From assembly GCA_038087875.1 (NCBI GenBank), contig CM075977.1:229338001-229402000 (forward strand): a stretch of 64,000 nt of DNA, given 5' to 3'. The DNA comes from Malacoraja senta (lineage: Eukaryota). This document shows positions 13,891 to 33,692 of the stretch, one piece after another (the stretch's first letter is position 1; every line of letters begins with the position of its first letter). Both the position numbers and the translations under genes were made by a program. The notes beneath the pieces are model-generated. The model was not told the origin of the DNA, searched no databases, and saw only the letters and a program-made list of their open reading frames with translations.

Positions 13891-13971
13891 ACCTGTCATT
13901 TAAGCAACAATAGATAATTATTAGAGACAGTTCACAGAATGTTCACTTGGATATGGATTGTCTTATTAGAG

Positions 13972-15095
13972 AAACATAGAAACATAGAAACATAGAAAAT
14001 AGGTGCAGGAGTAGGCCATTCGGCCCTTCGAGCCTGCACCGCCATTCAATATGATCATGGCTGATCATCCAACTCAGTATCCCGTACCTGCCTTCTCTCC
14101 ATACCCCCTGATCCCTTTAGCCACAAGGGCCACATCTAACTCCCTCTTAAATATAGCCAATGAACTGGCGTCAACTACCCTCTGTGGCAGAGAGTTCCAG
14201 AGATTCACCACTCTCTGTGTGAAAAAGTTTTTCCTCATCTCGGTCTTAAAGGATTTCCCCCTTATCCTTAAGCTGTGACCCCTTGTCCTGGACTTCCCCA
14301 ACATCGGGAACAATCTTCCTGCATCTAGCCTGTCCAACCCCATAAGAATTTTGTACGTTTCTATAAGATCCCCTCTCAATCTCCTAAATTCTAGCGAGTA
14401 TAAGCCAAGTCTATCCAGTCTTTCTTCATATGAAAGTCCTGACATCCCAGGAATCAGTCTGGTGAACCTTCTCTGCACTCCCTCTATGGCTATAATGTCC
14501 TTCCTCAGATTTGGAGACCAAAACTGTACGCAATACTCCAGGTGTGGTCTCACCAAGACCCTGTACAACTGCAGTAGAACCTCCCTGCTCCTATACTCAA
14601 ATCCTCTTGCTATGAAGGCCAACATACCATTCGCTTTCTTCACTGCCTGCTGCACCTGCATGCCTACTTTCAATGACTGGTGTACCATGACACCCAGGTC
14701 TCGCTGCACCTCCCCATTTCCTAATCGGCCACCATTTAGATAATAGTCTGCCTTCCCGTTTTTGCCACCAAAGTGGATAACCTCACATTTATCCACATTA
14801 TACTGCATCTGCCAAACATTTGCCCACTCCCCGAGCCTATCCAAGTCACCTTGCAGTCTCCTAGCATCCTCCTCACAGCTAACACTGCCCCCCAGCTTAG
14901 TGTCATCCGCAAACTTGGAGATGTTGCTTTCAATTCCCTCGTCCAGATCATTAATATAAATTGTAAATAGCTGGGGTCCCAGCACTGAGCCTTGCGGTAC
15001 CCCACTAGTCACTGCCTGCCATTGTGAAAAGGACCCGTTTACTCCTACTCTTTGCTTCCTGTTTGCCAGCCAGTTCTCTATCCACATCAATACTG
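13972..15095 (-). mobile_element. Young 5'-truncated CR1-type LINE, specific to unit B
   Basis: 338-aa uninterrupted RT C-terminus (SKFADDTK) and (ATAGAAAC)n tail. Empty site in unit C at about 30350 (tgtgagaaaggttg). Confidence 0.92.
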
Positions 15096-15669
15096 AAGGT
15101 TGAAACGGGTAGGGGTGTGCTCATTGTAACTTAAAATATAAGAGGTGATCACACTGAAACATAAAAATCCTGAGGGGGTTTGGCAGCTGTATGTTGGAAG
15201 GATGATCCAGCTTGTAGTAAAGTCTGGGACCAAAACACATCAACACAGAATAAGGTGCAGGCGTCATTTATGAATGAGACAAGGAAGAATATCTTCTCTC
15301 AAAAATTGGTGACTTATCTGAATTCCTTATCCCAGGAAAGGCTGAATCTTTGAATATATTCAAAGTGGAGACCAATTTATAATCAGTAAAAGAATCGAGT
15401 GCAATGGGACAGCGTGGGAGAGCAGATTTGGAATGTTGGATTAGCCATAGTTTTATTGAGCATGAGAGAGGCTCAAGTGCTGAATGGCCTGCTCCTGTTC
15501 CAATTTCCTATGGTTTCCATCACACTATTAACTTGTTTTCAGCTTCTTTTAAAAAAAATGTCTATTTTGATTTGATCTACAAATTGCAACATATCTGCTT
15601 ATTATTAATTTGACTATCTTGATGTAATCAGTGTTTTCTGTTGCACCAATGACTGGCCTTTGCAAATTC

Positions 15670-15705
15670 ATTATATTGAGCAACCCTAGTTATTCGGTAT
15701 ATAAA
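15670..15705 (+). promoter_or_regulatory. Gene B promoter: ATTGAGCAAC and TATAAA (15700-15705)
   Basis: Paralogous to the gene C promoter. Confidence 0.5.
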
Positions 15706-15780
15706 TGCAGGGGAAATAGAAGGCACCAAGAAAAACCAACTGAATCAGAAAGGCAAGGCTCGGGAAGACTGGAATCCGAC

Positions 15781-15843
15781 AGTTCTACAGTGTTAGTGTT
15801 ACACTCCTGCTGCTGTTTGCAATTGGTGCAGCTTTGCCTATGG
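15781..15843 (+). pseudogene. Gene B exon 1 with lost start codon (ATGAAC replaced by GTTC relative to gene C)
   Basis: Reads YSVSVTLLLLFAIGAALPM then G|gtgaga. There is an in-frame TGA upstream with no intervening ATG. The only in-frame ATG is at 15840-15842. Confidence 0.8.
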
Positions 15844-16312
15844 GTGAGAAAAATACCCTACATCTTGTCATTTATAGTCTTTAAGCTTTATAGCTGTAAT
15901 TAGATTTTTGATTAATTCAGCCAGTTGAATGAACTGTTGAAGACAGTTCACCGAATGTTCACTTGGATAATATTAGATATGGATTGTCTTATAATAAATG
16001 GTTGAAGCTGGTGGGTCTGTTCTCATTGTAACTTAAAAAATGAGCGGTGATCACACTGAAACATAGAATCCTGAGGGGGTTTGGCTGATTCTGATCCAAA
16101 GACAGTGTGTGTTTTCCAGGTTGTTCTATTTGATGTTCAGTCTTGCAGGTTACTATGTGTCCAGATGGAACTTGATGTGTCCTTCCTCGGTCTTAGAATA
16201 GGCCTTGTTATAACAGTGCAGAAGGCCCAAAAAGAGGCCACATTGTGAACACTGAAAGTAATAAAACAAATTTTAAGGAATACATTTTTACAACATGTCA
16301 TTTGTTTTACAG

Positions 16313-16445
16313 CAGCTCGTTTAAATATCAAAGAAGGAGCACATTGTAGGTGCAGTAAGTATGCAAAAAATTCCATGTCCAAGGATAATATTTATAAAAT
16401 TGAAATCTTCACCAGGAGCACAATGTGCAAATACACGGAAATCAT
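16313..16445 (+). CDS. Gene B exon 2: (A)ARLNIKEGAHCRCSKYAKNSMSKDNIYKIEIFTRSTMCKYTEI(I)
   Basis: ttttacag| and AT|gtaaga, 133 nt, Cys1, Cys2 and Cys3 intact. Confidence 0.88.
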
Positions 16446-16694
16446 GTAAGAATTATTCATACATTTAAATTTTCATGTTTATATTTCAATGGGTGGGATT
16501 CGTGATAATGTGGAGTAATTGTATGAATTACATTTTTATCTGCAGATCATCTGCCACATGTGAAAGGAACAAACAAGAGAACTCTGACAAACATTTTTTA
16601 ATTAAATGATGTTGCAATTTATCCCCCCCCCCCCGCACCTCCTCAAAAAAAATCTAATAACTAGAAAGATTAAATGTCTCCCTTTTTCTTTCAG

Positions 16695-16791
16695 AGCGCA
16701 TCAGATTTCACCACATGAGAAAGTTTGTTTGAAAGGGAAGACTTCCTGGGTGAAGATGCTTATTAATGAGTTACTTACCAAAACTGCATAG
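16695..16791 (+). CDS. Gene B exon 3: AHQISPHEKVCLKGKTSWVKMLINELLTKTA*
   Basis: tttctttcag| acceptor, Cys4 and Trp present. Stop TAG TAG where gene C has ATG CAG, so the protein is 5 aa shorter. Confidence 0.88.
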
Positions 16792-17077
16792 TAGGATACA
16801 TTTTGAAGGGCTTCATTGCCACAATGGTATCCTGAGGTGATGAAACAGGTTTTATACCTACAAATGTTTTTATGGTGAAGTGATTTTAATTCTAAATAAA
16901 ATGGATTGTATCTCTGATATGATTTAAGCATCAAATACATGGCATTCTAAAATGTATTTGTCTGTTCCTAAATATAATGCCAAATCTTCTATCTTCCCTT
17001 TCAGGGAACGTCTCCAATATTAAATCATAGAATGAGGTTCACAGCAGATCATTCAGCCCAAATGTCTTTGCTGGTTA

Positions 17078-18256
17078 AGAAGATTCAATTGTTGGGTATT
17101 AATGGTGGAGTAGCAAGATGGATTCAACAGTGGCTGAATGGGAGATGCCAGAGAGTAATTGTGGATGGCTGTTTGTCAGGTTGGAGGCCGGTGACTAGTG
17201 GGGTGCCTCAGGGGTCTGTGTTGGGTCCACTGTTGTTTGTCATGTACATCAATGATCTGGATGAAGGTGTGGAAAATTGGATTAGTAAGTATGCAGATGA
17301 TACTAAGATAGGTGGTGTTGTGGATAATGAAGTAGATTTTCAAAGTCTACAGAGAGATTTAGGCCATTTGGAAGGGTGGGCTGAAAGATGGCAGATGGAG
17401 TTTAATGCTGACAAATGTGAGGTGCTACATCTCGGCAGGACAAATCAAAATAGGACGTACACGGTAAATGGTAGCGAATTGAGGAATGCAGTTGAACAGA
17501 GGGATCTAGGAATAACTGTGCATAGTTCCCTGAAGGTGGAATCTCATGTAGATAGGGTGGTAAAGAAAGCTTTTGGTGTGCTGGCCTTTATAAATCAGAG
17601 CATTGAATATAGAAGTTGGGATGTAATGTTAAAATTGTACAAGGCATTGGTGAGGCCAATTCTGGAGTATGGAGTACAATTTTGGTCGCCTAATTATAGG
17701 AAGGATGTCAACAAAATAGAGAGAGTGCAGAGGAGATTTACTAGAATGTTGCCTGGGTTTCAGCAACTAAGTTACAGAGAAAGGTTGAACAAGTTAGGTC
17801 TTTATTCTTTGGAGCGCAGAAGGTTAAGAGGGGACTTGATAGAGGTCTTTAAAATTATGAGCGGGTTAGACAGAGTGGACGTGGATAAGCTTTTCCCATT
17901 GAGAGTAGGGAAGATTCAAACAAGGGGACATGACTTGAGAATTAAGGGACAGAAGTTTAGGGGGAACATTAGGGGGAACTTCTTTACTCAGAGAGTGGTA
18001 GCTGTGTGGAATGAGCTTCCAGTGGAAGTGGTGGAGGCAGGTTCGATGTTATCCTTTAAAAATAGATTGGATGGGTATATGGATGGGAAAGGAATGGAGG
18101 GTTATGGTCTGAGTGCAGGTAGATGGGACTAGGGGGAAGTATTTATTTTTAATTTTAAAAAAAATTTAAAAAAAAAATGTTTGGCACGGACTTGAAGGGC
18201 CGAGATGGCCTGTTTCCGTGCTGTTATGGTTATATGGTTATATGGTTATATGGTTA
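17078..18256 (+). mobile_element. Young 5'-truncated CR1-type LINE downstream of gene B
   Basis: Uninterrupted RT C-terminus to the stop at 18132 and (ATGGTTAT)n tail. TGGTTA occurs on both sides (17072-17077, 18251-18256). Empty site at 32329-32334. Confidence 0.93.
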
Positions 18257-19872
18257 TGTAAAAGTGATATTCAAGTACTCTCACCTCTAGCTCTTCAACT
18301 CCCAACCACCACCAAAACTCCACCACCATTTCAGGTATTCTCAAAGCCATGCAAATTTCTCTGCTTTGAAAGTTCTTCCAACTAACTATTTATTGATAGT
18401 TACCATTAAATCTGCTTCCACTGCCTTTTCAGAGAAACTCCAGATTAACAGCTCTTTTCCTTGTGTTTCTTCTGCAAATTTCTCCACATCAGTGCCCTCA
18501 AGTCAATGATGCTTTTGCCACGAGCAACATTTCCATCATATTCTCCATTTTATATTTCATGATATACTGGATATTGGATATACAGTATGCTCCAAACCTC
18601 ACCTTCACTCCACCTATGCCCTGTTAAATAATCCAAGCTTCTCCATTTTCTCAATAAAATAGAGATTCCAAAAACATGGCTTCGTTCTTGTAAATCAACT
18701 TTGTGGGACTTTGATTTTGGACGTAATTTGGTGCCAAGAACTGGAAGGATTACATCAGCGAGAAACCTATGAAAGGATTATCATAGTCCCTTGCTTTTTT
18801 TATTCTGTGATGAGATGGACAAAGAGCTGAATCCCTGTTTCCTTTTTTTAATGGCAGTCATTGGCACATCAGGATGGAGGTGATTGAGCTTTCCTGATCT
18901 GATGACATTGTAAATCCAGGGGCACAGTAGTATACCCGACTCCGCTTTTTCCAGACACATCTTTCCAGCCACTGCTCCATTCTTTTCAGGGTCTCTATTA
19001 TTCTGTCATTCACCTTTTCTCTGTCGGTAACACAAGGAACATTAAATTAGAGTAACCAGAGTAATGTGGATAAATGGTCTTTAGTTTAAGAGCATACTTC
19101 ATATTATTTTAAACTATAAGCAGCATGGTACAGCAAGAAATGTGTCTGTCGAGAGCTTGCTATATTATATGTATCAGAAATTGTGTGCGTTCAACTTTTG
19201 TTAATAAACTGCTTTGAATCCAATAATCGTATCCTGGTCATCATTTTAAAGAGACACAGGGAGAATGATACGGAACACCAAAGCTAAGTTAAGTCAATTA
19301 GATTTATAGAACACACAAACAGGCTGAATGAGTCTGAAGATGGGTCTTGACCCGAAACATCACCTATTCTTTTCTCCAGAATTGCTGCCTGACCCAATGC
19401 ATTTTGCAACTCCAGCATTTTGTATCTATGTTCGACAGAAACAGGCAAATCAGCATACCATGTCCATGATATCCAGTACTCATCTATATTAATGCCATTT
19501 ACTAGTACTTTGTCTGTGACCTTCTATGCATTGGCAATACAAGTGCTTATCCAGAAGCTTCTATAATGTTGTGAGAAACCTATCCACGCCACCCACTGTG
19601 GTAAAATGTGTTAAACATTTGTAACATCTTCTGCGTGACTATGATTTTCCTCAGTTTTGTTCCAACCGCTTATCTCTTACTCACAATTTACTCTATCATC
19701 CCCTCCACAAGTCCAAGGTAGTGCAAGAAGTGGTCTTTAGTGTTCTGTTGCCGAGGTAGGATTAGATTTGTTCAGGTCAGTTCAAGAACCTGACGATGTA
19801 AGAGAGTATCTATTCCTGAACCTGGTGGTGCGGGACTTCAGGCTTCTGGACCTCCTGCCTGACAGTAGCAGC

Positions 19873-20610
19873 CAGGCACGGAAATTGCTATCAAAATATG
19901 AGGGGGACCGGGGGACAGGGGACACACAATATCTTGGCGGCCGCACGCGCATACTCACACACACGAGCGAGGCTTCAGAGGCCCTGTGAACGGTAATTTC
20001 AGCTCAATCCTGCGCTAAATGCAGCTCAACTGTGCCTGTCTCACCTGGTCATGCCTGGACTGATGACATATTTCCCGTAAATCTAGGCAGGGCTGTAGGT
20101 TAACCTGGCGGGATAGGCAGAGTTGAGCTGGATTTAGCGCTGCTTCTCTGCGCTGGCTGTGGGCCTGGGGGCACCTCTCCCTTCTGACCCGACGTCTCTG
20201 GCCACCCTCGGGTGTGGGGGGGCTCTCGGGTGTGGACGGGGATGGTCCAGTGGCGGTTCGGCAGCGATTGCAGCGCCGGAGACCGGGATCGATCCTGGCT
20301 GTGGATGAGGCACAGGTCTGTGTCCAGGGCTGCCGAGAGTGTTTTGGCACGCCTCCATCCTCCAATCACCGCGCTCTATCCTCAGTCCCACCCCCCCTAC
20401 TTCCGCCTCTGACCGACACCTCCGTCCTCCAATCATCGCACTGAATCATCATGGTCCCACCCCCATTGCCTGCTGACCGACATCTCTCTCGTCCAATCGG
20501 CGCCCTCGATCAGCAGTCCCACTCCCACTGTCACGGAAAGCGGAGATTTCAACGGGTTTAATAATCACAGGGACATGTCCCCCCTGGCCCCCCTGGGATT
20601 TCCACCCCTG
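19873..20610. mobile_element. Non-autonomous hAT-type DNA element inserted in a Rex1/Babar remnant
   Basis: Imperfect TIRs CAGGCACGGAAAT / ATTTCCACCCCTG. 8-bp TSD gtagcagc / gtagcaac. Single-copy empty site at 34407-34414. Confidence 0.82.
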
Positions 20611-21419
20611 GTAGCAACAATAAGAGGGCGTGGCCAAGATGGCCGGGATCCTTGATGTTAGCAACACATCATGCAGATACGTTCGATGGAGGGGGGGGGG
20701 GGGTTGGGGGGGGTTGTACCTGTCATGGACGGCAACTCTTTCATTCCTGTGCGATAGAATTGCCATACCAGGCCATGATGCGACCAGTCACAATACTTTC
20801 TACAGTGTTTCTGTGGAATTGTGTTGGAGTATATAGTGACATGCCAGATCTCTTTAAACTTTGAAAAAAGTAGGGTTGTTGGCCCTTCATGATTCCATCT
20901 ACGTGCTGGGCCCAGGACACGTTATCTGAGATGTTAACACCCCCGGAATTTGTGTAATATCTCATAACTATCAGGATTAAATTCCATTTGTAATTCAATC
21001 TGATATGCTAGCACCAGCTACTCTGCTGCCTTTAACTCTATGACAATCCATTGCCCAGCAAATTTAAAACACCTTGATCTGAAAGATCAAAGCTAATGTT
21101 GTATATTCCCTGGATGAGATGTGTCAGTCTTCCAAGCTATTACAAGTGTTATTTTTAACAGACCTTTTATACTATTAATAGGAACATATAGCGCTGATGG
21201 AATGTGTAGAGCGAATGTGCCTCAGACAGCTTGGTGACAGAACATAAAGTAAAACAGTTGGCTCAGTCTTTCCTTACCATTCATTCATACCATTTAAAAT
21301 TCTGTTTCCAGTAACTTTTCAATCAATGAATTGCAGATCACAACCAGTTCATCTTAAAAAAAATATTTCCTCATGCTGCCTCACATTCTTTTCTCAGTGA
21401 TCTGATCATGTAAGATTTT

Positions 21420-22460
21420 GACTCATGGAAGCACAAGGAGGTCTTAAAGCCTCTTCATCCTTCTCCATTATTCAATAAACATCCTGCACTCCAAGGAACA
21501 AAGTCCCAACCTCCTTACAGCTCAGGCCCCTCAGTCCCAGCAACATACTCACTCATCTTCTCTGTACTCTCCATCCAGCCCAATGACATCCCTGTGACCA
21601 AGACTGAACACAGCGCTCCAAATGTGGCCCCACAACGTCCTGTACAACTAAATACCCTGAACGCCAAGGGCCAATGTAGAACAAGCCCTCTCCATCATCC
21701 TACCGACCTATAACACAACCTCCAGGGAACCATGCACCAGCACCCTACATCCCTTGCTCCACCACGGCCCCAGGGCACACATACATCATGAAGGTCCCAT
21801 CTCAACCCGACATCCCAAAATCCCAAAACACCCCTCATCCACCTGCACCAAACTCCATCAGCTATTCCTCAGCCCATTCACCCAGCTGATCAAGATCCCA
21901 CTGCAATCCTTGACAACCACCTTCACTGTCCACAACACCACCTACTTTAGTGTCATCTGCAAACTGCATGCTAAAACTGTCAATAGTTTATCAAACATAT
22001 TTTTCTTTCGCAATAAATTATCTGCTGAAGGAACTCCCAGCATCTGTGGGATGGAGGGGAGTAGTCATCGACGATTCTAACCAGTAGTGTCTAGGACCAG
22101 GCATCATAGCCTCAGAATAAAATTACGTTTCTTTAGGAAGTAGATAAGGAGGAATTTCTTTAGTCAGAGGGTGGTGAATCTGTGAAATTCATTGCCACAG
22201 AGGGCTGTGGAGGCCAGGTCAATTTTTAAGGCAGAGATAGATAGATTCTTGATTAGTATGCATGTCAGGGGTTATGGGGAGAAGGCATGAGAATGGGGTT
22301 GAGGGGGAGAGATAGATCAATTCACGTAAACCTCCTCTGGACCCTCTCCAACACCAGCACATCTTTCTTCAGATATGGGACCCAAAACTGCTCACAATAA
22401 TCCAAAGGCAGTCTTACTGCTCAGTCTTTTATAAAGCCTCAGCATTGCATCCCTGTTTTT
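21420..22460. mobile_element. Mixed decayed CR1-type fragments in both orientations
   Basis: gaccaagactgaacacagcgctccaaatgtggcc (minus) and aatttctttagtcagagggtggtgaatctgtg (plus) CR1 motifs. Confidence 0.7.
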
Positions 22461-23249
22461 GTATTCTAGTCCTCTTGAAATAAATGCAACATTGCATTTG
22501 CCTTTCTTACTACTGATTCTCCAATTTCTCAATATAACTAATGTATAAATTCAAGCATACCATCTACCTTTGTGCACCATTCCAAACTTGCCCTGCCAGA
22601 GACGTGTGTCCCCTCCTTCAGTCCTGCCTCCTACTGTAATGTCACTACTTCAGTTACAGTATGTTGTCCCTCTTCATACTCAAATATTTCTCTTCACATT
22701 TCTGTCCATGAGATTACACTCACCATGTCCGCACACTTCACCAGCCTGTCTCTGATTCTTGTCCCTCCCACAGTTTACACTATTATATGTTTCCATGTTG
22801 TCTGACAAACCAACCCTTCACCCAACTCTGTGCCTTGTCATCACGTTAAATTCACATACAAACTGATTGTCCTTGTCGCAAGAGACACAATGCTGTTAAT
22901 AATGATGCAGTGATAGTGCACTGAAAAGGCCGCTTGTCCTATCGTGTGTCTGTCAGCTCTGTGAGCGTCCATCTACACATCAATCATACGACCCTCAGCA
23001 ACTCTTTTTGGTAAATTATCCAAGATCTCAATCAAGCAAAGGCCAGCATTTATTTCCACCTCTAACTAAACTTGATCCACGGTATGATGAAGATATTCCC
23101 AAGATAGTGGAGGGTCGGGGGTTCTAATATTTAGACCCTGTGATGATGAATAAAGATTGAGTAATTTGGGATGCAATATAATTCTGCTGCAGCTTCTGAA
23201 GGCCCACAAAGACTTCCCCAAGACCCTCCTCAGTACAGTTTTGTTTATT

Positions 23250-23775
23250 GTCACATGTACCGAGGTACAGTGAAAAGCTTTTGTTGCGTGCTATCCAGTC
23301 AGCAGGAAGACAAAACATGATTGCAATTGAGCCATTTACAGTGTATAGATACATGATAAGGGAATAATGTTTAGTGCAAGGTGAAGCCAGCAAAGTCCGA
23401 TCAAGGATAGTCCAAGGGTCACCAATGAGGTAGGTAGTTCAACACTGCTCTCTGGTTGTGGTAGGATGATTCACTTGCCTGATAACAACTGGGAAGAAAT
23501 TGTCCCTGAATCTGGAGGTGTGCGTTTTACACATCTATAGATTTTGCCTGATCGAAAAGTGGAGAAGAGGGTGTGGCCAGGGTGCAACTGGTCCTTGATT
23601 ATGCTGCTGGCCTTGCCAAGGCAGCGCGAGGTATAAATGGAGTCAATAGAAGGAAGGATGGATTGTGTGATGGTCTGAGCTGGGCTCTGTCCACACTTGG
23701 CTGCAATTTCTTGCGGTCTTGGATGGAGCTGTTCCCAAACCAAGCTGTGATCCATCCTGATAAAATGCTTTCTAG
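23250..23775 (-). mobile_element. Rex1/Babar-type LINE 3' end; a plus-strand copy (24400-24677 + 28745-28890) is split by the second DIRS
   Basis: CLGKASSIIKDQLHPGHTLF...SGKIYR and TSRFRDSFFPAVIRQL C-terminal motifs. Confidence 0.72.
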
Positions 23776-24677
23776 TCATCACAATTCCCTTTAAGTATTA
23801 CTGAATGTTTTTAAATTGTGAGAATTCTGCTCAATATAATGTCCCTGCCCTCGTTCACCAATGATAGAGTACACATTGTGGTGGTGACCCCATGAGTTAG
23901 CACTCAAACTGTTTTTGATTTCACAACACAATTAGAACTGGTTGTTGCACAACATTTCACAACCTGTATTCATGTGCCATCCCTTCTCATGAGTTTATCT
24001 CCATCTTTAATATGTTTATTTGATTTCCATTGTCAAATCTTGCATCAAAGCAGACTGTACATTGAATATTACTGCCCTCAGTAATTTGCAATCTTTCAGT
24101 AATTGTCAGCACACGGCTCCTTAGTACACTCAGCGCTACTATCTGGAAAAAACCCAAAAATATTTGTGAGTTGATCCTATATTATTCCACATAATTAAGT
24201 GGAGAAAGAGCATGAAATTAGCTGTAATCCCGGCCCCATTTACTTTGCATACAGTAGGCTGATTGGTTGCTCCTGGATCCACACAGTTTACTTCACTGGA
24301 GCAATATCTTAATCTGTTCATCTATCAATGTTTATATCTGCGTGCAATTAGTGCTCCACTAAATAAGTTCTTAATTAGTGATCGCAGACTAGACCATCAC
24401 ACAATCCACCATCTATTCCATTGGCCCTATCTAAATTTCATGCTGCCTTGGCAAAGCCACCAGCATAATTAAGGACGAGTCTCATTCCCTCTTCTCCCAT
24501 CAGGGAAAGGGTACAGAAGTGTGAAAATGCATACTTCTAGATTCAGGGACAGTTTCTTCCCAGCTGTTATCAGGCAATTGACCAATCACCAACTGGAGAG
24601 CTGCCCTGACCTACCATCTACCTCATCGGACAACCCCAGACTATCTTTAGTCGGATTTTATCGGACTTTATCTTGCA

Positions 24678-27600
24678 TTTTACTTTGGAGTCACATAAGT
24701 GACTACATGAAGAAGCCCGCCAGCCCACATGCGCGTCAATACGTCTAACGCATGGCGCAACGACTGGCTGCGAGGAGCGTCGCTCCTCCAGCGGTAAGTT
24801 TCAAACCCTGCAGGTAAGTTTTAAACTTATTTTCAGGTTTTATTTTTGGTTGCAGGAATCTCTTTTACAGAGTTTCCTGCTGGATATGGAAATCCGGTGC
24901 AAAATCCAGACGGGCCGCGGGGAAACTGGCTACGGAGGACCGCGGGAGTGCGGGAAGCCGGTGGCCGGCGAGTTCGCTACCCGAGTCGCTGACAGTGCGG
25001 TCGGCGACTTCAGACTTTGGCAACCCCGAAAGGGTGTACAGCCAAACGGTAGTCTGAGAGGCCTGTGGACTTGGACAAGTCAGGCCAGGAGGGTTCCCCT
25101 CCGTCAAACATGGGTAGCGTCCTCAGGCGTTTATCCCAGATGGAGCATGGATAGCGTCCTCGGGCGTTCATCCCAGATGGAGCATGGATAGCGTCCTCGG
25201 GCGTTCATCCCACAGAGGATGCTCCATCATGATATGCTCCGTGAAACGGTGCCATATCAGCGCAGGTCTCCTCAGGGGCCTGCGGCAGCGCCTGTTTCAG
25301 GGCTGCTTAAAAATCTCCCTCTCTGTGGAGGGGAGTGCCAGGGGTCAGTGTATGGCTGACTCCGAATTCGGAAGTATGTCCGTGGAACATACTGGAATGC
25401 ATGCGTGAGGTTCAAGAATTATCTGCCATGGCATCAAGGTTTGCGATACCCTCGCAAACAAAGGAGCCGCTGCAAGAAGAGTTGGCTTCCAGCATCAACT
25501 ACCTCACATCACATCATTACAGGAACAGGTGACGGCTGCAAAATACAATACACCTGTAAATTGTGCATTCCTGAAAGTGCCGGCAGTGAACAGCGCTATC
25601 TGGGGAGACATTGGAAGGGGCGTCACGGCATTTGCCAGATCTGAGGATGGCGGGCCCTTATCGGACGACCAGCAGGATGCCCTGGCGTTGATGTGCAATG
25701 CACACTTCGAAATGAACTGCTTTCAGAAGAACGCCATCAGCCCTGCCTTAAATCCCAAATTTGCAGGCTTATGTAAGGCCAGCAATGTCCAGCCGCCGAA
25801 TCTTCTCTTCGGGGAAGACCTACCTAAACAGGTAAAAGACCTGGATGAGGAAGCAAAAGCTGTCGGACTAATCAAGGTACCAACGACGAGCAAAGCTTCA
25901 CCATTTCGGCGACAACACCCCTACGCCTCCATCGGCAGTAAGCAGTTCACTGTAGCTGGTGGCAGCTCGAAAGCTGATTCTCTGGGCAGAGGTCTTTTAT
26001 GCCAAGGCCACCGGTAACCATGGAGGTAGGTGGGTCTGGTTCTTTCCAAAACATGGGGTGTGTGGACCATTTACAAGTTTACAATATACATCAAGTTGAG
26101 CATTTATTCATTCCAAACAAAAAGGTTTGGATATACAGGCAGATATCCAAACAAGTAAAATATCTGAATGAGGAAGCAAAAGCTGTCGGGTTAATTAAAG
26201 CACCCAAGACGAGCAAAGCTTCACCGTTTCAGCGACGACACCCTGCGCCTCCAAAAAAGAAAGATGGAGGATGTCGGATCATCCTTGATCTAACTTACAC
26301 TTAACTCACATGTGCAGTATAGACATTTTAAAATGGAAAACTTCGTTACTGTCTAACAACTAATTCCCAAAGGATGCTTTATGGCATGCATCAATCTCAA
26401 AGATGCATACTATTCAGTTCCCATTCACAGGGATCACCGGAGATATTTGAAATTTAGCTGGATGGGGCAACGATAGCAGTTTAAAGCGTTGCAAAATGGG
26501 CTAACTTCAGCTCCCAGGTTATTTACCAAATTACTAAAGCCAGTGCTTGGGCTGCTCAGAGCTCAAAAACACATTGTTATGGCCTAACTGGATGATATTC
26601 TAAAATGCTGTATTTGGCTAAATTAGCTGTTTCAGCCGCAAAACTAATATTTGAGAAATTGGGGGTTTCTCATCCATCCAGTTAAATTTAAGTTGATACC
26701 AACTAGAGTTATTGATTATTTGAGATTTACCTTTAACTCTATTAATATGTCTGTGACTCCGCCCTGGGGCAAGAGATTAGAATTAATAGAAGCCTGTAAC
26801 AACCTTGTTGTTATGAAGCAGCCTTCTATTCGTCAGGTGGCTAGTGTAATTGGCAATATAGTGGCTGTTTTTCCAGCTGCGCAATTTGGGCCTTTGCATT
26901 ATCAGAACTTACAACGTGCAAAGGAGCAAGCTCTCAAGTACCATTTAGGTCATTGTTAACAGACCTATGCTATTACCAGCTGAAGCTATCAGAGTTACAA
27001 TGGTGGACGAACAGTATTCAGCATTGCTCCACTAACATTTTGGTCAGTAAACCTTCAGTTATATTATAAACTGATGCTAGTGCTCAAAGATGGGAAATTA
27101 CTAATATCATCTCTATTTACGGAGGCGGATGGGATGTGCATGAGTTACCAATTCTTCAGTTATATGGTATCAACTACCTAGAGATACTGGGGGCATTCTA
27201 TGGGTTAAAGGCTTATTGTGCGAATATGTATAATCTGCATGCTCAACTACAAGTTGATAACACTACGGTGGTGGCATATATTAATCACATGGGTGGAATC
27301 AAGTCAGTATCCTGTGATAGTTTACCTAACCTCATTTGGCGCTGGTGTATCGTCACATAAATTTAATGACAACACAGAATAGATGTTGGATCACAAAGTA
27401 TTTAATGACATCGTTGCTCGATATGGAACACCGAATATCGATTTGTTTGCATCTAGGCTCAATCACCAGTTGCAAAACTATGTGGCATGGCAGCCAGACC
27501 CAGGGGCAGTGGCAATAGATGCATTCTCGCTACACTGGGGAGGAATGTTCTTTTATGCCTTTCCTCCATTTTGCCTCATCAGTCGGGTCTTGCAAAAAAT

Positions 27601-28744
27601 CCAGCAAGATTCCGCTTCAGGCATTTTCGTAGTGCCTGACTGGCCTATGCAGCCATGGTTCCCGCTGATGTTGGGAATGATTATAGAACCTTATATGGTT
27701 ATCTCTAAACACAAAAATTTGCTGGTTCATCCCGTGACTCGGGAAGTCATCCTCTGCATGATAGAATCAATTTATTGACTTGCAGACTCTCAGAAGACCG
27801 TTCCTGGGGTTCGGGTTGTCAGACCGAACCATGGACATGCTCACTGTCGCTTGGAGGGATAGCACCAAAAAGCAGTACATTTCCTCATCAGGAGATGGGA
27901 AGTGTTTTGTTTAAATGCTAATATAACATATAATACGGTACGGATAACTGATGTCTTGGAGTTCATTTTCAAATGGGTCTTTGACAAAAAATTAAGATAG
28001 TGCCATTAACTGTGCCTTCTCATCATATTTGCTGCAGGGATCGGGACCTACTCTGTCTCCAGATGGTTTAGATATGTATTGGATTGTACAGGAGTGAACA
28101 CTGATGTTATTAAATCTCACTCCACCAGGGCTGCGATAACATCAGCAGCAACGTTCATGGAGGTTCCGCTGGACCGCATCCTAGCGACAGCAGGATGGTC
28201 GAATGAGTGGACTTTCCATACCTTTTATAATAAACCGATTGCCAGGCCGGGTTTGTTTGCCAACTAAATTTTAAGTTCTATTCAATAATGTGCTTATTAT
28301 TTGCTTATTATTAGCATCAACATGTTTTAAATCTATGTCATGTCTGAATGCATTATCTTTTCAATCATTTCTGGTCAACTAATGCAGTGTGTTGCATGGA
28401 CTCGTGTTCACGGCATGAAATCACAGAGCTTTGAAATCTTCACGTAGTCACTCACGTGACTCCGAAGTAAAATAGGAAGATTAAATGAGAACTTACCAGT
28501 TTGAAGTTTGATCTTTATTTTATGAGGAGTTATGATGAGGGATTCTCATAAAGGTCATGTGGTAGTTCTTGTTTCTCGAATCTTCCTATAATCAGTTCAA
28601 CAACTGTTTCTGTGATTTCACACGGCTGCTTTGAAGGTTGACACGCATGCGGGCTGGCGGGCTTCTTCACGTAATCCCTCATCGTAACTCCTCATAAAAT
28701 AAAGATCAAACTTCAAACTGGTATGTTCTCGTTTAATCTTCCTA
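24678..28744 (+). mobile_element. Second DIRS1-type element (about 4.1 kb, degenerate, internal deletion in YR)
   Basis: Termini related to the first DIRS. ICR at 28438-28545. Gag-like 25529-26017, RNase H 26651-27360, MT-like 27383-27778, YR HSTRAA 28079-28267. Inserted without TSD at cttgca|ctaaat. Confidence 0.9.
25109..25212 (+). repeat. 37-bp tandem repeat, about 3 copies, inside the second DIRS
   Basis: catggatagcgtcctcgggcgttcatcccagatggag units start at 25109, 25146 and 25183. Confidence 0.9.
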
Positions 28745-28898
28745 CTAAATGTTATTCCCTTTACCCTGTATTTGTACAATGTGCACAGCTCGATTATAAT
28801 CATGTATTGTTTTTCCACAGACTGGATAGCGTGCAACAAAAAGCTTTTCACTGTACCTCAGTACACATGACAATAAACTAGACTAAACTAAATATTAC

Positions 28899-29218
28899 TA
28901 TGCGGCATGGTGGTGCAGCAGTAGAGTTGCTGCCTTACAACTATTGCAGTTGGAGACCTGGGTTTGATCTACGGGTGCTATCTGTATGGAGTTTGTATGT
29001 TCTCCCCATGACCACGTGGGCTTTCTCCAAGATCATCGGTTTCTTCCCATACTCCAAAGATGTACAGGTTTGTAGGTTAATGGCTTAGTATAAATGTAAA
29101 TTATCCCTACTGTGTGTAGGATAGCATTATTGTGCGGGGATTGCTGGTCGGTGCGGACTCGGTGAGCCGAAGGGCCTGTTTCCACGCTGTATCTCTAAAC
29201 TAAACTAAACTAAAGTAA
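28899..29218 (+). mobile_element. tRNA-derived V-SINE with CR1-like tail (others: 39125-39444 minus, 40463-40765 plus, 54481-54890 plus and interrupted, about 56540-56800 plus)
   Basis: A and B boxes (ggtggtgcagc, ggttcgatcc), V-domain ctccggtttcctcccacactccaaag, tail gggccgaagggcctgtttcc plus (CTAAA)n. Confidence 0.8.
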
Positions 29219-30918
29219 AGAGTATTTTAAGTGGCTTTTGGATAGGCACATGGATATACAGGAAGTGGGGGGATGCAGATTATGTACAGGCACCATCCTA
29301 AATTCCAAAGGATACCCATGAATCGAGTGGTACATAAAGGCTGGCACTGCCAATGACACTCATGCAACATGCTTCAACAGGACAAATGTCTGACAGGAAG
29401 TACACAGGACTACATTTTATGAAAGCATCTTCTCAATGTGCATCCACAGACTGTGTGTGATGCTTGAGGAAGCAATCAATATACGGATCAGTCTGCAATG
29501 ATGAAATGTAGATCCCACCAATGGATCTCAACAGTGGAACCAAAACAGCTCACACATTTCAGCCCAAATAGAAAATACATCAGATTTTCCCCATAAATGT
29601 TACTTAGAGGGATCACACAATCCACAGTAACGTACATGATCGTTTATTTTAAGATCTGTTTTAGTTGCACTAAGGACATGAGTGTTTTTTATTTTGCACT
29701 AGAATTGTAGTTATAAACTTATTTATTATATATTATCAATGTGTATTGTGTTTAAGGTCTGTTATGCTGCTGCGAGTATGTATTTCATTGTTCCATCGTT
29801 GGTTCTTTAGGATCACTGAATTCTCAATGATTTGCTGAGTCCAGTGGAAGCGTTTAAAACTTTTTGTTCAGGCACAATGGACATACGGCATCAGAGCAAA
29901 GCATTAAAATATCTTAACTCAAAATTGAACGTTTCATAACTAACAGAACAAAACACTATGGAATTAGTACATAAAGACTAAAGACTGAACATGACTTTTA
30001 TGGATACACTGAACATAGAGTGATGAGGATGTATCAAGCACCTCGCACCATTAAAGGATCATTGTTCACAGTTCTGTCCAGACTCCTGTCAGTTGTAACC
30101 TTAATCTCACAAACTGTTTCTGGACACCGCATTGAGCCAAACTGCTCGCATACTACTAAATGCAGTAGACGAGGTTTGTGGAGGCGCATATGGACCTCTC
30201 TCTCACCTGGACGGGCTGCTGTGGTTCCTGGAGGGAAGTGAGAGAGGAGATGTAGGGACATGTGTTATGTGATCCTGTTATTTAAGGAACAATAGATAAT
30301 TATTAGAGACAGTTCACAGAATGTTCACTTGGATATGGATTGTCTTGTGTGAGAAAGGTTGAAACGGGTGGGGCGGTACTCATTGTAACTTAAAAAATAA
30401 GAGGTGATCCCACTGAAACATAAAAATCCTGAGGGGGTTTGGCAGCCAGGTGTTGGAAGGATGATCCTGCTTGTAGTAAAGTCTGGGACCAAAACACATC
30501 AATGCAGAATAAGGAGGAGTCTTTTATGAATGAGACAAGGAAGAATATCTTCTCTCAAAAATCGGTGACATTTGAATTCCTTATCCCAGGAAAGGCTGAA
30601 TCTTTGAATATATTCAAAGTGGAGAAAAAATTATAATCAGTGAAAGAATCGAGTGTAATGGGACAGGGTGGGAGAGCAGATTTGGAACGTTGGATTAGCC
30701 ATAGTTTTATTAAGCATGAGAGAGGCTCAAATGGTGAATGGCCTGCTCCTGCTCCAATTTCCTATGGTCTCCATGACATCATTAAAAAAATTTCAGCTCC
30801 TTTTAAAAAAAAATGTCTATTTTGATATGATCTACAAATTGCAACATATCTGCTTATTATCAATTTGACTATCTTGATGTAATCAGCGTTTTCTGTTGCG
30901 CCTTTGCAAATTCATTAT

Positions 30919-30949
30919 ATTGCGCAACCCTATTTATTCGGAATATAAA
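30919..30949 (+). promoter_or_regulatory. Gene C promoter: near-palindromic C/EBP site ATTGCGCAAC (30919-30928) and TATAAA (30944-30949)
   Basis: 9/10 match to the ATTGCGCAAT consensus, 15 nt before the TATA box. Confidence 0.6.
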
Positions 30950-31030
30950 TGCAGAGGAAATAGAAGGCACCAAGAAAAACCAACTGAATCAGAAAGGCAA
31001 GGCAAGGCTCGGGAAGACTGGAATCCGACA

Positions 31031-31094
31031 ATGAACTACAGTGTTAGTGTTACACTCCTGCTGCTGCTTGGAATTTGTGCAGCTTTGTCTATGG
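31031..31094 (+). CDS. CXC chemokine-like gene C, exon 1 (MNYSVSVTLLLLLGICAALSM)
   Basis: ATG, hydrophobic core, 64 nt, G|gtgaga donor. Confidence 0.9.
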
Positions 31095-31569
31095 GTGAGA
31101 AAAATACCCTACATCTTGTCATTTATAGTCTTAAGCTTTATAATTGTTGTTAGATTTTTGATTAATTCAGCCAGTTGAATGAACTATGGAAGACAGTTCA
31201 CCGAATGTTCACTTGGATAATATTAGATATGGATTGTCTTATAATAAATGGTTGAAGCGGGTGGGTCTGTACTCATTTAAAACCACACACCTAAAAATGA
31301 GCGGTAATCACACTGAAACATAGAATCCTGAGGGGGTTTGGCAGGTTCTGATTCAAAGACAGTGTGTGTTTTCCAGGTTGTTCTATTTGATGTTCAGTCT
31401 TGCAGGTTACTATGTGTCCAGATGGAACTTGATGTGTCCTTCCTTGGTCTTAGAATAGGCCTTGTTATAACAGTGCAGAAGGCCAAAGAAGAGGCCACAT
31501 TGTGAACACTTAAAGTCATAAAACTAATTTTAAGGAATATATGTTTACAACATGTCATTTGTTTTACAG

Positions 31570-31702
31570 CGGCTCATTTAAATATCAATGAAGGAGCACA
31601 ATGTATGTGCAGCACATATGAAACAAATTCCACGTCCGTGGTTGATATTTATAAAATTGAAATCTTCATGGCGAACGAAAAGTGCAACTACACGGAAATC
31701 AT
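31570..31702 (+). CDS. Gene C exon 2: (A)AHLNINEGAQCMCSTYETNSTSVVDIYKIEIFMANEKCNYTEI(I)
   Basis: ttttacag| and AT|gtaaga, 133 nt, CMC and Cys3 present. Confidence 0.92.
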
Positions 31703-31951
31703 GTAAGAATTGTTCATGCATTTAAATTTTCATGCTTATATTTCAATGGGTGGGATTCGTGATAATGTGGAGCAATTGTATTAATTACATTTTTATCTGC
31801 AGATCATCTGCCACATGTGAAAGGAACAAACAAGAGAACTCTGACAAACATTTTTTAATTAAATGATGTTGCAATTTATCCCCCCCCCCCCCCACCTCCT
31901 CAAAAAAAATCTAATAACTAGAAAGATTAAATGTCTCCCTTTTTCTTTCAG

Positions 31952-32063
31952 AGCTCATCAGATTTCACCACCTGAGAAAGTTTGTTTGAGTGGGAAGACT
32001 TCCTGGGTGAAGACGCTTATTATTGACTTACTTAACAAAACTGCAATGCAGGATACATTTTGA
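31952..32063 (+). CDS. Gene C exon 3: AHQISPPEKVCLSGKTSWVKTLIIDLLNKTAMQDTF*
   Basis: tttctttcag| acceptor, Cys4, TGA stop, AATAAA at about 32150. Confidence 0.92.
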
Positions 32064-33692
32064 AGGGCTTCATTGCCACAATGGTATCCTGAGGTGATGA
32101 AACAGGTTTTATACCTACACATGTTTGTATGGTGGTGATTTTAATTCTAAATAAAAAGGATTGTATCTCTGATATGATTTAATCATCAAATACATGACAT
32201 TCTAAAATGTATTTGTCTTTTCCTAAATATAATGCCAAATCATGTATCTCTTCCCTATAAGGGAAAGTCTCCAATATTAAATCATAGAATGAGGTTCACA
32301 GCAGATTATTCAGCACAAATGTCGTTGCTGGTTATGTAAAAGTGATATTCAAGTACTCTCACCTATAGCTCTTCAACTCCCAACCACCACCAAAACTCAC
32401 CACCATTTCAGGTATTTTCAAAGCCATGCAAATTTCTCTGCTTAAAAGTTCTTCCAACTAACCCTTTATTGAAAGTTACCATTAAATCTGCTCCACTGCC
32501 TTTTCAGAGAAACTCCAGATTAACAGCTCTTTTCCTTGTGTTTCTTTTGCAAATTTCTCCACATCCGTGCCCTCTAGTCAATGATGCTTTTGCCATGAGC
32601 ACACTTTCATCTTCTCCATTTTATATTTCATGATATACTGGATATTGGATATACAGTATGCTTCAAACCTCACCTTCACTCCACCTCTGCCCTGTTAAAT
32701 AATCCAAGCTTCTCCATTTTCTCAATAAAATAGAGATTCCAAAAACATGGCTTTATTCTTGTAAATCAGCTTTGTGGGACTTTGATTTTGTTCGTAATTT
32801 GGTGCCATGAACTGGAAGGATTACATCAGCTAGAAACCTATGAAAGATTTATCATGGTTCCTTGCTTTTTTTAATTCTATGATGAGATGGGCAAACTGCA
32901 GAATCCCTGTTTCCTTTTTTAATGGCAGTCATTGGCACATCAGGATGGAGGTGATTGAGCTTTCCTGATCTAATGACATTGTAAATCCAGGGGCACAGTA
33001 CTATACCCAACTCCGGTTTTTCCAGACACATCTTTCCAGCCACTGCTCCATTCTTTTCAGGGTCTCTATTACTTTGGCATTCACCTTTTCTCTGTCGGTA
33101 ACACAAGGAACATTAAATTAGAGTAACCAGAGTAATGTGGATAAATGGTCTTTAGTTTAAGAGCATACTTCATATTATTTTAAGCTATAAGCAGCATGGT
33201 ACAGCAAGAAATGTGTCTGTCGAGAGCTTGCTATATTATATGTATGAAAAATTGTGTGCGTTCAAGTTTTGCTAATAAACTGCTTTGAATCCAATAATCG
33301 TATCCTGGTCATCATTTTAAAGAGACACAGGGAGAATGATACGGAACACCAAAGCTAAGTTAAGTCAATTAGATTTATAGAACACACAAACAGGCTGACT
33401 GAGTCTGAAGATGGGTCTTGACCCGAAACATCACCTATTTCTTTTCTCCAGAATTGCTGCCTGACCCAATGCATTTTGCAACTCCAGCATTTTGTATCTA
33501 TGTTCGACAGAAACAGGCAAATCAGCATACCATGTCCATGATATCCAGTACTCATCTATATTAATGCCATTTACTAGTACTTTGTCTGTGACCTTCTATG
33601 CATTGGCAATACAAGTGCTCATCCAGAAGCTACTATAATGTTGTGAGAAACCTATCCACGCCATCCAGTGTGGTAAAATGTGTTAAACATTT

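What the first reader, a model, noticed from the sequence alone, without database searches (positions are those of the whole stretch)
16313..32063. Exons of paralogues B and C diverge about 7-fold faster than the intron between them
Hand count: exon 2 differs at 24/133 nt (18%), giving 17 amino-acid changes and only 2 purely silent codons. The adjacent 249-nt intron 2 differs at 6 nt (2.4%), and the last 112 nt of intron 1 at about 7. Exon 3 has 6 replacements plus the stop change against 1 silent codon. All four Cys, the KIEIF core and TEII are spared. Loss of constraint alone cannot make an exon outrun its introns. Inference: strong positive selection, like the exon-over-intron acceleration described for toxin gene families, or exon-limited gene conversion from a more distant paralogue.
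Basis: partly seen in the sequence, partly recalled or inferred. Interest (0 to 1): 0.8.

Follow-up and report, generated by a model that had tools for sequence, protein, structure and literature searches.

The report
Fast-evolving skate chemokine gene copies
Four recently duplicated CXC chemokine genes beside the skate J-chain gene have changed their mature-protein exons about three times faster than their introns, almost entirely by amino-acid-changing substitutions. This is the mark of positive selection known from venom toxins and host-defence peptides.

Summary
B exon 2 (16313-16445) and C exon 2 (31570-31702) differ at 24/133 nt (18.0%), and intron 2 differs at 6/249 (2.4%). The "7-fold" is flattered by an unusually quiet intron. 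Against 3.9 kb of aligned non-coding DNA (4.85%), exon 2 is 3.7-fold faster and exons 2+3 are 3.0-fold faster. Exon 2 is still the single highest 133-nt window in the whole B-C alignment.

The genes are three-exon, ELR-less, CXCL8-like CXC chemokines (Pfam IL8, 31.9 bits). The genome holds only four copies of this subfamily: B, C and two outside the window (L002, L004). All six pairs show the same excess (2.4- to 3.7-fold, P 1e-4 to 3.5e-11).

The excess is non-synonymous. About 66 replacements are inferred on the tree against 18 expected at the non-coding rate, while silent changes number about 7 against 4.7 expected. Omega is 2.35 (P about 0.03-0.04), and M2a beats M1a (P 0.026).

Coding and non-coding trees agree, and no donor paralogue exists, so exon-limited conversion is not supported. 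Changes concentrate in the N-terminus, N-loop, 30s loop and 40s loop. Copy B has lost its start codon.

Verdict: a real case of diversifying selection and a new member of a known kind. The scan has no earlier report of this on other DNA.

The parts
13405..19872 (+). Duplicated block carrying gene B. It is homologous to 29776-34414, with two B-specific insertions at about 13975-15095 and 17078-18250.
   Evidence: Self-BLAST of the window. Block identities are 93.3%, 91.7%, 95.8% and 93.7%.
15700..15843 (+). Gene B TATA box (15700) and exon 1. The start codon is lost through a 2-bp deletion plus substitutions at about 15778-15786. There are four replacement changes in the former signal peptide. 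No in-frame ATG remains except the last codon of the exon.
   Evidence: Four-way alignment and in-frame scan. B has 7 private changes in this 146-nt piece, against 1-2 in the other copies.
15844..16312 (+). Gene B intron 1 (phase 1), GT..AG.
   Evidence: B-C divergence is 25/468 = 5.3%.
16313..16445 (+). Gene B exon 2 (133 nt). It encodes the N-terminus, the CXC motif, the N-loop, strand 1, the 30s loop and the start of strand 2. It is the hypervariable exon.
   Evidence: Pfam IL8 hit on the translation. B-C divergence is 24/133 = 18.0%.
16446..16694 (+). Gene B intron 2 (phase 2), 249 nt.
   Evidence: B-C divergence is 6/249 = 2.4%.
16695..16791 (+). Gene B exon 3 coding part, with stop codon TAG at 16789-16791. 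A polyadenylation signal lies at 16895.
   Evidence: B-C divergence is 10/97 = 10.3%.
29776..34414 (+). Duplicated block carrying gene C. It ends near the assembly gap at 34469-34668.
31031..31094 (+). Gene C exon 1 coding part (ATG at 31031, signal peptide). The TATA box is at 30944.
   Evidence: The donor at 31094 is used by a spliced contig from a related species (run X25).
31570..31702 (+). Gene C exon 2 (133 nt).
   Evidence: A 256-nt contig of run X1 matches 31463-31718 with no difference. Both splice junctions, 31094|31570 and 31702|31952, are implied by the X25 contig.
31703..31951 (+). Gene C intron 2.
31952..32063 (+). Gene C exon 3 coding part. The B-type TAG is replaced, so the frame runs five codons further to TGA at 32061-32063. 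A polyadenylation signal lies at 32150.
   Evidence: The X25 contig runs unspliced through the stop to 32103.
9712..9844 (+). Exon 2 of the more distant 'A-type' CXC chemokine paralogue in the window (locus L011). It is used here only as a possible conversion donor and as an outgroup.
   Evidence: It is 44% identical to B exon 2 at protein level, and its third Cys is replaced by Tyr.

Best explanation
B and C are two of four young tandem or dispersed duplicates of a three-exon, ELR-less, CXCL8-like CXC chemokine gene in the chemokine cluster beside the skate J-chain gene. After duplication, the part encoding the secreted mature protein (exons 2 and 3) fixed amino-acid replacements about 3.6 times faster than neutral DNA changes. 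The signal-peptide exon (except in B), the introns, the promoter and the 3' UTR drifted at the background rate.

The most likely cause is positive diversifying selection on the chemokine's interaction surfaces: the N-terminus, N-loop, 30s loop and 40s loop. In CXCL8 and CXCL10 these bind the receptor and glycosaminoglycans. The selection would come from receptor or ligand re-tuning after duplication, from conflict with pathogens, or both.

Shown here: the rate excess, that it is non-synonymous, that the gene trees agree, and that no donor exists. Inferred: the selective agent and the biochemical consequence. One consequence that can be seen is that C has become acidic (pI 5.1) with three N-glycosylation sequons, while the other three copies stay basic (pI 9.2-9.6).
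For: - Rate excess in every pair: exons 2+3 are 8.7-18.1% divergent against 3.0-5.4% for 2.1 kb of non-coding DNA. The ratio is 2.4-3.7, with P from 9e-5 to 3.5e-11.
- Sliding windows: exon 2 is the unique maximum over 4.1 kb of B-C alignment.
- The excess is non-synonymous. pN over non-coding is 2.4-3.9 (P 3e-4 to 2e-10), while pS over non-coding is 1.3-2.9 and mostly not significant. On the tree there are about 66 non-synonymous changes against 18.4 expected (P 8e-18), and 7.2 synonymous against 4.7 expected (P 0.2).
- Codon models: omega = 2.35, LRT against 1 gives P = 0.039, and M1a against M2a gives P = 0.026 with 76% of sites at omega 3.5. The simulated null gives a one-sided P of about 0.025-0.03.
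- Coding and non-coding ML trees have the same topology, ((B,L002),(C,L004)), with support 91 and 100. Tree lengths are 0.348 and 0.103.
- Variable residues cluster in the N-loop (11/13), 30s loop (5/6) and 40s loop (6/6), against 10/37 in strands and helix. With the N-terminus and the X of the CXC motif added to the loops and the four Cys counted with the core, the test is 28/36 against 10/39 (P 8e-6). The Cys scaffold is untouched.
- Substitution spectrum: kappa is 1.0 in coding DNA and 2.2 in non-coding DNA, so this is not simply more of the same mutations.
- The pattern holds across species. In runs from two related organisms, contigs over exon 2 differ by about 12%, against about 3-5% for intron 1 and the promoter. 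A spliced contig from a third organism aligns in exon 1 and the 3' part but fails to align in the variable parts of exons 2 and 3.
- The neighbouring A-type subfamily also shows dN > dS (ratio of means 1.87; 92 of 105 pairs).
Against: - The codon-model tests are only modestly significant (P about 0.03), because there are just 75 codons in 4 sequences.
- Many codons carry two or three changes, and multi-nucleotide mutations are known to inflate such tests.
- dS is nominally 1.5 times the non-coding rate, so some exon-specific rise in mutation, or an older exon age, cannot be excluded.
- Copy B, which has one of the longer coding branches (shorter only than L004's, and 4.6 times its own non-coding branch), has no start codon. 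At least its most recent evolution cannot have been selected at the protein level.
- No expression data exist for this species, no orthologue set could be assembled, and there is no polymorphism data.
- The structural mapping rests on alignment to CXCL10 and CXCL8 and on identical Cys spacing, not on a model.
Confidence: 0.7

Rival explanations
1. The exons are older than the introns. The non-coding DNA of the four copies has been homogenised by gene conversion (concerted evolution), and selection for diversity has kept conversion tracts out of, or purged them from, the mature-peptide exons. The exons therefore only look fast.
For: - dS in the exons is nominally higher than non-coding divergence (1.3-2.9-fold by pair, 1.5-fold on the tree).
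- Intron 2 is more similar between the neighbours B and C (2.4%) than between the sister copies B and L002 (4.4%).
- One long concordant run, C with L002 over most of exon 3, is significant in a Sawyer-type runs test (17 sites, P < 0.0002).
Against: - The dS excess is not significant (P 0.2).
- Non-coding divergence is even along 3.9 kb, with no patchwork of near-zero tracts.
- The non-coding tree pairs copies 70 kb apart (B, L002) and 0.93 Mb apart in opposite orientation (C, L004), rather than the adjacent B and C. It equals the coding tree.
- The intron 2 signal for B+C is one indel-shifted patch next to a poly-C run.
- By the counts of private changes, the C-L002 run in exon 3 should consist almost wholly of changes private to B or L004. 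That fits C and L002 simply keeping the ancestral exon 3.
- This rival also needs diversifying selection.
Confidence: 0.12
2. The exons have been hit by an exon-focused mutational process combined with relaxed constraint, not by selection. Candidates are clustered multi-nucleotide mutation or transcription-linked hypermutation.
For: - Many adjacent or same-codon double changes: 4-11 adjacent pairs among 20-41 coding differences.
- B, a copy without a start codon, also has a long coding branch and 7 private changes in exon 1.
- dS is slightly raised.
Against: - A mutational process would raise silent and replacement sites alike, giving omega near 1. Observed omega is 2.35 and the excess is essentially all non-synonymous.
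- Adjacent differences are also common in the non-coding DNA (3-22 pairs per comparison).
- Introns only tens of bases from the hot segments are quiet, and known transcription-linked hypermutation does not respect splice sites (established knowledge, not tested here).
- The four Cys and the strand cores are spared.
Confidence: 0.08
3. This is exon-limited gene conversion from a more distant paralogue. Exon 2 of B or C was overwritten by a diverged donor.
For: - The cluster holds at least 19 more distant CXC paralogues that could act as donors.
- Two sites in exon 2 group B with C against the tree, and there the other two copies (L002 and L004) carry the A-type letter or, at one site, differ from each other.
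Against: - A DNA search of the whole genome finds only four copies of this subfamily.
- No copy comes close to another in exon 2. The minimum is 13/133 differences, between B and L002.
- B-type exons are only 56-61% identical to any A-type exon 2, and the longest exact shared run is 8-14 nt.
- Exon 2 supports the same tree as the flanks: 6 of 8 informative sites.
Confidence: 0.04
4. This is an artefact: mis-assembly, collapsed haplotypes or a wrong gene model.
For: An assembly gap lies just after block C (34469-34668). The cluster contains a 55.6-kb repeat whose copies have identical exon 2 sequences, and this could be an assembly duplication.
Against: - C exon 2 with its flanks is reproduced exactly by a contig of run X1. 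That run may be the sample the window was assembled from, so this support may not be independent.
- The copies differ by 3-5% in non-coding DNA and by large insertions, far above allelic levels.
- Splice sites are canonical, and both junctions are matched by a spliced contig from a related species.
- Full-length C passes the Pfam IL8 threshold.
Confidence: 0.02

Closest known systems
Accelerated evolution of snake-venom phospholipase A2 and other toxin multigene families (Nakashima et al. 1993 and 1995, as cited in PMC6062510; habu genome, PMC6062510)
   Same: Young tandem duplicates encode small secreted disulfide-rich proteins. The mature-peptide exons diverge faster than the introns and UTRs, KA/KS is above 1, and the Cys scaffold and signal peptide are conserved.
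   Different: These are immune chemokines of a cartilaginous fish, not venom components. The excess is about 3-fold. The selective agent is presumably receptors or pathogens rather than prey.
Trappin (WAP host-defence peptide) multigenes of pig, cow and armadillo (PMC2831891)
   Same: These are recently duplicated host-defence genes whose coding regions evolved much faster than the non-coding exons, introns and flanks, with dN/dS 1.8-1.9. The test design, coding against non-coding distance, is the one used here.
   Different: The protein fold and the animal lineage differ. In pig and armadillo, dS was accelerated as well, whereas here dS is not clearly raised.
Positive selection in mammalian GRO chemokines CXCL1-3 (PMC5627130)
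   Same: These are CXCL8-cluster CXC chemokine paralogues that diversify after duplication, with selected sites on interaction (glycosaminoglycan-binding) surfaces.
   Different: That case was inferred from orthologue and paralogue protein-coding alignments and has no exon-over-intron contrast. The skate genes lack ELR, have three exons, and include a charge-reversed member.
Chondrichthyan CXCL 'cluster A' next to JCHAIN (Kawasaki et al. 2024, PMC10801876)
   Same: The genomic setting is the same: CXCL8-like genes upstream of jchain. The genes share phase 1 and phase 2 introns, the signal/mature boundary at the exon 1/2 junction, the CXC motif in exon 2, and the Glu and WV motifs.
   Different: That paper describes synteny and gene structure, not evolutionary rates. 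The genes here have three exons rather than four and carry EGA in place of ELR.

Membership tests
CXC chemokine (Pfam PF00048, IL8) | Profile match above the curated threshold | tested here: met
   Full-length C scores 31.9 bits against a cut-off of 21.3, E = 1.6e-7. Exon 2 alone scores 14.8-16.8 bits. The best solved relatives are CXCL10 (E 8e-4) and IL-8 (E 4e-3).
CXC chemokine (Pfam PF00048, IL8) | Four conserved Cys with a C-X-C pair, and CXCL8-like spacing to the third and fourth Cys | tested here: met
   All four copies have C-x-C, 24 residues to Cys3 (23 in the L004 copy, which has a one-codon deletion) and 16 residues to Cys4. Human CXCL8 has 24 and 15 (from memory of the sequence, consistent with the alignment).
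CXCL gene structure as defined in PMC10801876 | Intron phases 1-2, signal/mature boundary at the exon 1/2 junction, CXC encoded in exon 2 | tested here: met
   Phases were read from the sequence. Both junctions are reproduced by a spliced contig.
CXCL gene structure as defined in PMC10801876 | Four exons | tested here: not met
   The stop codon lies in exon 3 in all four copies and in the A-type copies. The spliced contig runs unspliced past the stop. The paper says 'most', not all, CXCL genes have four exons.
CXCL8-like (ELR+) chemokines | ELR motif before the first Cys, plus the conserved Glu (TEI) and the WV motif | tested here: inconclusive
   Glu (TEII) and WV (SWVK) are present, but ELR is replaced by E-G-A in all four copies. 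The genes are therefore CXCL8-like by position and two motifs, but not ELR+.
'Accelerated evolution' class of secreted-protein multigenes | Coding divergence exceeds intron and flank divergence between recent duplicates | tested here: met
   The ratio is 2.4-3.7 in all six pairs, with P from 9e-5 to 3.5e-11. Tree length is 0.348 against 0.103.
'Accelerated evolution' class of secreted-protein multigenes | dN/dS above 1 | tested here: met
   Omega is 2.35, with P 0.039 by LRT and about 0.03 by simulation. M2a beats M1a at P 0.026. Significance is modest because the genes are short.
'Accelerated evolution' class of secreted-protein multigenes | Conserved signal peptide and Cys scaffold around variable loops | tested here: met
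   Exon 1 differs by 1.4-2.0% among C, L002 and L004. The Cys are invariant, and the loops are variable at 28/36 positions against 10/39 in the core. B's exon 1 is the exception because it is degenerate.
Exon-limited gene conversion | A donor paralogue that nearly matches the divergent exon, with tract ends in the introns | tested here: not met
   There are only four copies. The closest exon 2 pair differs at 13/133 nt. No A-type tract is shared. The trees are congruent.

The most novel reading that the evidence does not exclude
The chemokine cluster from which the J chain was co-opted may still be a toxin-like diversity generator. On this reading, its young duplicates are driven apart so fast at the protein level that sequence similarity decays within a few per cent of neutral divergence: 17 of 43 full exon-2 codons are replaced at about 5% neutral divergence, and one copy has reversed its charge and gained three glycosylation sites. 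This would give a directly observable mechanism for how J chain lost recognisable similarity to CXCL genes. It would also mean that skates run a lineage-specific, rapidly re-tuned set of chemokine ligands, possibly including a decoy or antagonist (C).
Probability: 0.2. Interest if true: 0.6.

Novelty: new member of a known kind. Interest (0 to 1): 0.45.

Why it matters
Cases where exons evolve faster than their introns are textbook for venom toxins and a few host-defence peptides. They are seldom documented for chemokines, and I found no report for a cartilaginous fish in five literature searches.

The case is clean. It has four young copies, an internal neutral yardstick, and congruent trees. 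It points to strong, ongoing adaptive diversification of neutrophil-type chemokines at the base of the jawed vertebrates.

It sits immediately next to JCHAIN, a gene recently shown to be a co-opted CXCL (PMC10801876). It therefore offers a testable model for how members of this cluster diverge beyond recognition.

It also flags specific residues, in the N-loop, 30s loop and 40s loop, for receptor-binding, glycosaminoglycan-binding and antimicrobial assays.

Tried and rejected
- **Profile search.** A search of 1.84 billion representative proteins with the four exon-2 peptides found only one irrelevant bacterial repeat protein.
- **Word-based homologue search.** A search with the 102-aa C precursor found nothing. 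No orthologue set could be built, and the look-up of encoding contigs was not usable.
- **RNA runs.** None is on record for this stretch. Expression in this species is therefore untested, and the one spliced contig comes from a run only guessed to be RNA, from a related organism.
- **Structure prediction.** The loop and strand mapping therefore rests on alignment.
- **Conversion from A-type paralogues.** Rejected.
- **Conversion among the four copies as the source of B-C exon 2 divergence.** Rejected.
- **The BC|DE signal in intron 2.** It is one indel-shifted patch beside a poly-C run.
- **First bootstrap script.** It timed out. The faster rewrite gave the result.
- **Naming.** My working labels D and E in scripts mean loci L002 and L004.

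Full report
**What is there**

The window is G000:C1:229338001-229402000 of a 1.94-Gb genome. Self-comparison shows that 13405-19872 and 29776-34414 are copies of one block, 92-96% identical.

Each block carries a small gene with canonical GT..AG introns.
- Gene B has exon 1 ending at 15843, exon 2 at 16313-16445 and exon 3 at 16695-16791.
- Gene C has ATG at 31031, exon 1 ending at 31094, exon 2 at 31570-31702 and exon 3 at 31952-32063.

C encodes a 102-aa precursor that passes the Pfam IL8 threshold (31.9 bits against 21.3). Its best solved relatives are CXCL10 and IL-8. The genes show these features:
- a C-x-C pair
- CXCL8-like Cys spacing
- TEII and WV motifs
- intron phases 1 and 2
- the signal/mature boundary at the exon 1/2 junction

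These are the features listed for CXCL genes of the JCHAIN-linked cluster in cartilaginous fish (PMC10801876). Two features differ: E-G-A stands where ELR would be, and the stop lies in exon 3, giving three exons rather than four.

A 407-nt contig from a related organism, in a run guessed to be RNA, lies on exon 1 up to 31094, on the middle of exon 2, and on exon 3 through the stop to 32103. The lengths fit junctions 31094|31570 and 31702|31952 exactly. The gene model is therefore supported by a spliced product.

**Check of the observation**

Every count reproduces:
- exon 2 differs at 24/133 nt (18.0%), with 17 replacements and 2 silent codons
- intron 2 differs at 6/249 nt (2.4%)
- exon 3 has 6 replacements, 1 silent codon and the stop shift
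- the four Cys, KIEIF and TEII are spared

Intron 2 is, however, the quietest piece of non-coding DNA. Intron 1 is 5.3%, the 3' flank 5.3% and the 5' flank 8.3%. All 3,918 aligned non-coding sites give 4.85%. Intron 2 is not significantly below that figure (P = 0.067).

The fair excess is 3.7-fold for exon 2 and 3.0-fold for exons 2+3. It is still highly significant (P = 1.4e-7). Exon 2 is the single highest 133-nt window in the 4.1-kb alignment, with 24 differences against a maximum of 16 elsewhere.

**A fuller alignment**

Protein and DNA searches of the whole genome find exactly four copies of this subfamily:
- B and C, in the window
- L002, 70 kb upstream of B
- L004, 0.93 Mb upstream, on the other strand

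There are also at least 19 copies of a more distant "A-type" subfamily, 44-46% identical in exon 2.

In the four-way alignment, all six pairs show the same picture. Exons 2+3 are 8.7-18.1% divergent and 2.1 kb of non-coding DNA is 3.0-5.4% divergent. The ratio is 2.4-3.7, with P from 9e-5 to 3.5e-11.

**Selection or something else?**

- *Pairwise rates.* Pairwise dN/dS is 1.1-3.2 by Nei-Gojobori and higher by other methods.
It gives omega = 2.35 and an LRT against omega = 1 of P = 0.039. M2a beats M1a (P = 0.026), with 76% of codons at omega 3.5. Results are stable over three codon-frequency settings.
- *Simulated null.* In 200 data sets simulated at omega = 1, 2.5-3% were as extreme.
- *Comparison with the non-coding yardstick.* This is the stronger test. 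Non-synonymous differences per site are 2.4-3.9 times the non-coding rate (P 3e-4 to 2e-10), while synonymous differences are 1.3-2.9 times and mostly not significant.
- *Counts on the tree.* About 66 replacements are inferred where 18 are expected (P 8e-18). About 7 silent changes are inferred where 4.7 are expected (P 0.2).
- *Substitution spectrum.* Kappa is 1.0 in the exons and 2.2 in non-coding DNA.

The exons are therefore not simply mutating faster. Replacements are being fixed preferentially.

**Conversion tests**

- Maximum-likelihood trees of non-coding and coding DNA have the same topology, with support 100 and 91.
- Of the 30 informative sites, 21 support that topology, including 6 of the 8 in exon 2.
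- The closest exon 2 pair (B and L002) still differs at 13/133 nt, against 3.0% in non-coding DNA.
- B-type exon 2 is only 56-61% identical to any A-type exon 2, and the longest exact shared run is 8-14 nt.
- A Sawyer-type runs test finds one significant run, C with L002 across most of exon 3 (17 sites, P < 0.0002). By the counts of private changes, that run should consist almost wholly of changes private to B or to L004. It most simply means that C and L002 kept the ancestral exon 3. In no reading does it supply a donor for the B-C divergence.
- The non-coding tree pairs distant copies rather than the adjacent B and C. This argues against ongoing homogenisation of the introns.

**Where the changes fall**

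I mapped positions by Cys spacing and by the CXCL10 alignment.
- N-terminus: 5 of 10 positions vary
- N-loop: 11 of 13
- 30s loop: 5 of 6
- 40s loop: 6 of 6
- three strands and the helix: 10 of 37

With the X of the CXC motif added to the loops and the four Cys counted with the core, the test is 28/36 against 10/39 (P = 8e-6). In CXCL8-type chemokines these loops form the receptor-binding and glycosaminoglycan-binding surfaces. That statement is established knowledge and was not tested here. C has become acidic (pI 5.1) with three N-x-S/T sequons, while the other three copies are basic (pI 9.2-9.6).

**Beyond this genome**

In DNA contigs from two related organisms, the pieces over exon 2 differ from C by 11.6-12.4%. 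The pieces over intron 1 and the promoter differ by 2.8-5% (runs X3 and X7). Orthology is not established, so this is only qualitative support.

The A-type subfamily also shows dN > dS (ratio of means 1.87; 92 of 105 pairs). Its exons are 6.1-6.2% divergent against 3.4% for intron 2. Diversification therefore seems to be a property of the cluster.

**An unexplained point**

B has no start codon. A 2-bp deletion and flanking substitutions remove the ATG, and no in-frame ATG remains except the last codon of exon 1. Its former signal peptide carries four replacements. Yet B's coding branch is 4.6 times its non-coding branch.

Either the ATG loss is very recent and follows a period of selection, or B uses an unseen first exon, or some mutational component contributes. 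The reads tool was already spent on C, so the B lesion could not be checked against reads.

**Verdict**

The best reading is positive diversifying selection on the mature chemokine after recent duplication (confidence 0.7).

The pattern is the classical "accelerated evolution" of toxin and host-defence multigene families (PMC6062510, PMC2831891). Positive selection on CXC paralogues is known in mammals (PMC5627130). This is therefore a new member of a known kind. What makes it notable is its host, a cartilaginous fish, and its position beside JCHAIN.

Noticed in passing
window 15770-15843 (gene B exon 1): Gene B has lost its ATG through a 2-bp deletion plus substitutions, and carries four replacement changes in the signal peptide. 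No alternative in-frame start exists. It is probably a very young pseudogene, yet exons 2 and 3 are intact.
   Followed up: partly
G000:C1:229142000-229271000 (loci L005-L008, L012-L017, L020-L021): The upstream chemokine cluster contains a 55.6-kb tandem repeat whose paired A-type genes have identical exon 2 sequences. It is either a very recent segmental duplication or an assembly duplication.
   Followed up: no
loci L005-L023; window 9712-9844 (L011): Several A-type copies look disabled. The exon 2 acceptor AG is lost through a T insertion (L005-L008, L013-L015, L018, L019, L023). The third Cys is changed to Tyr (L011, L012, L016, L017). A premature stop lies four codons before the normal stop (L020, L021), and in L012 the last codon before the stop is itself a stop. 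As a group they nevertheless show dN/dS of about 1.9.
   Followed up: partly
L004 (G000:C1:228435519-228435644, minus strand): The fourth B-type copy lies 0.93 Mb away in inverted orientation, beside two A-type genes (L009, L010). It has a fifth Cys in the N-loop, a one-codon deletion in the 30s loop, and the longest coding branch.
   Followed up: partly
window 31031-32063 (gene C): C is the only acidic member (pI 5.1, against 9.2-9.6 for the others). It has three N-glycosylation sequons and a five-residue C-terminal extension caused by loss of the TAG. It could be a decoy or antagonist.
   Followed up: partly
window 17078-18250 and 35709-36422; also 13975-15095: B carries two insertions that are absent from C. 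One of them (17527-18255) is 94% identical to a sequence at 35709-36422, so it is probably a mobile element that has been active since the duplication.
   Followed up: no
window 60663-61058 and 61346-61962: There are two tandem-repeat arrays, with units of 44 nt (7 copies) and 48 nt (8 copies), near the duplicated segment 57999-59044 / 62186-63226 downstream of the J-chain gene.
   Followed up: no
window 30700-30813 and 31840-31953: Contig word depth in all three DNA runs jumps 20- to 1000-fold at these two places, the second of which is inside intron 2. These stretches therefore belong to high-copy repeats shared by the related species.
   Followed up: no
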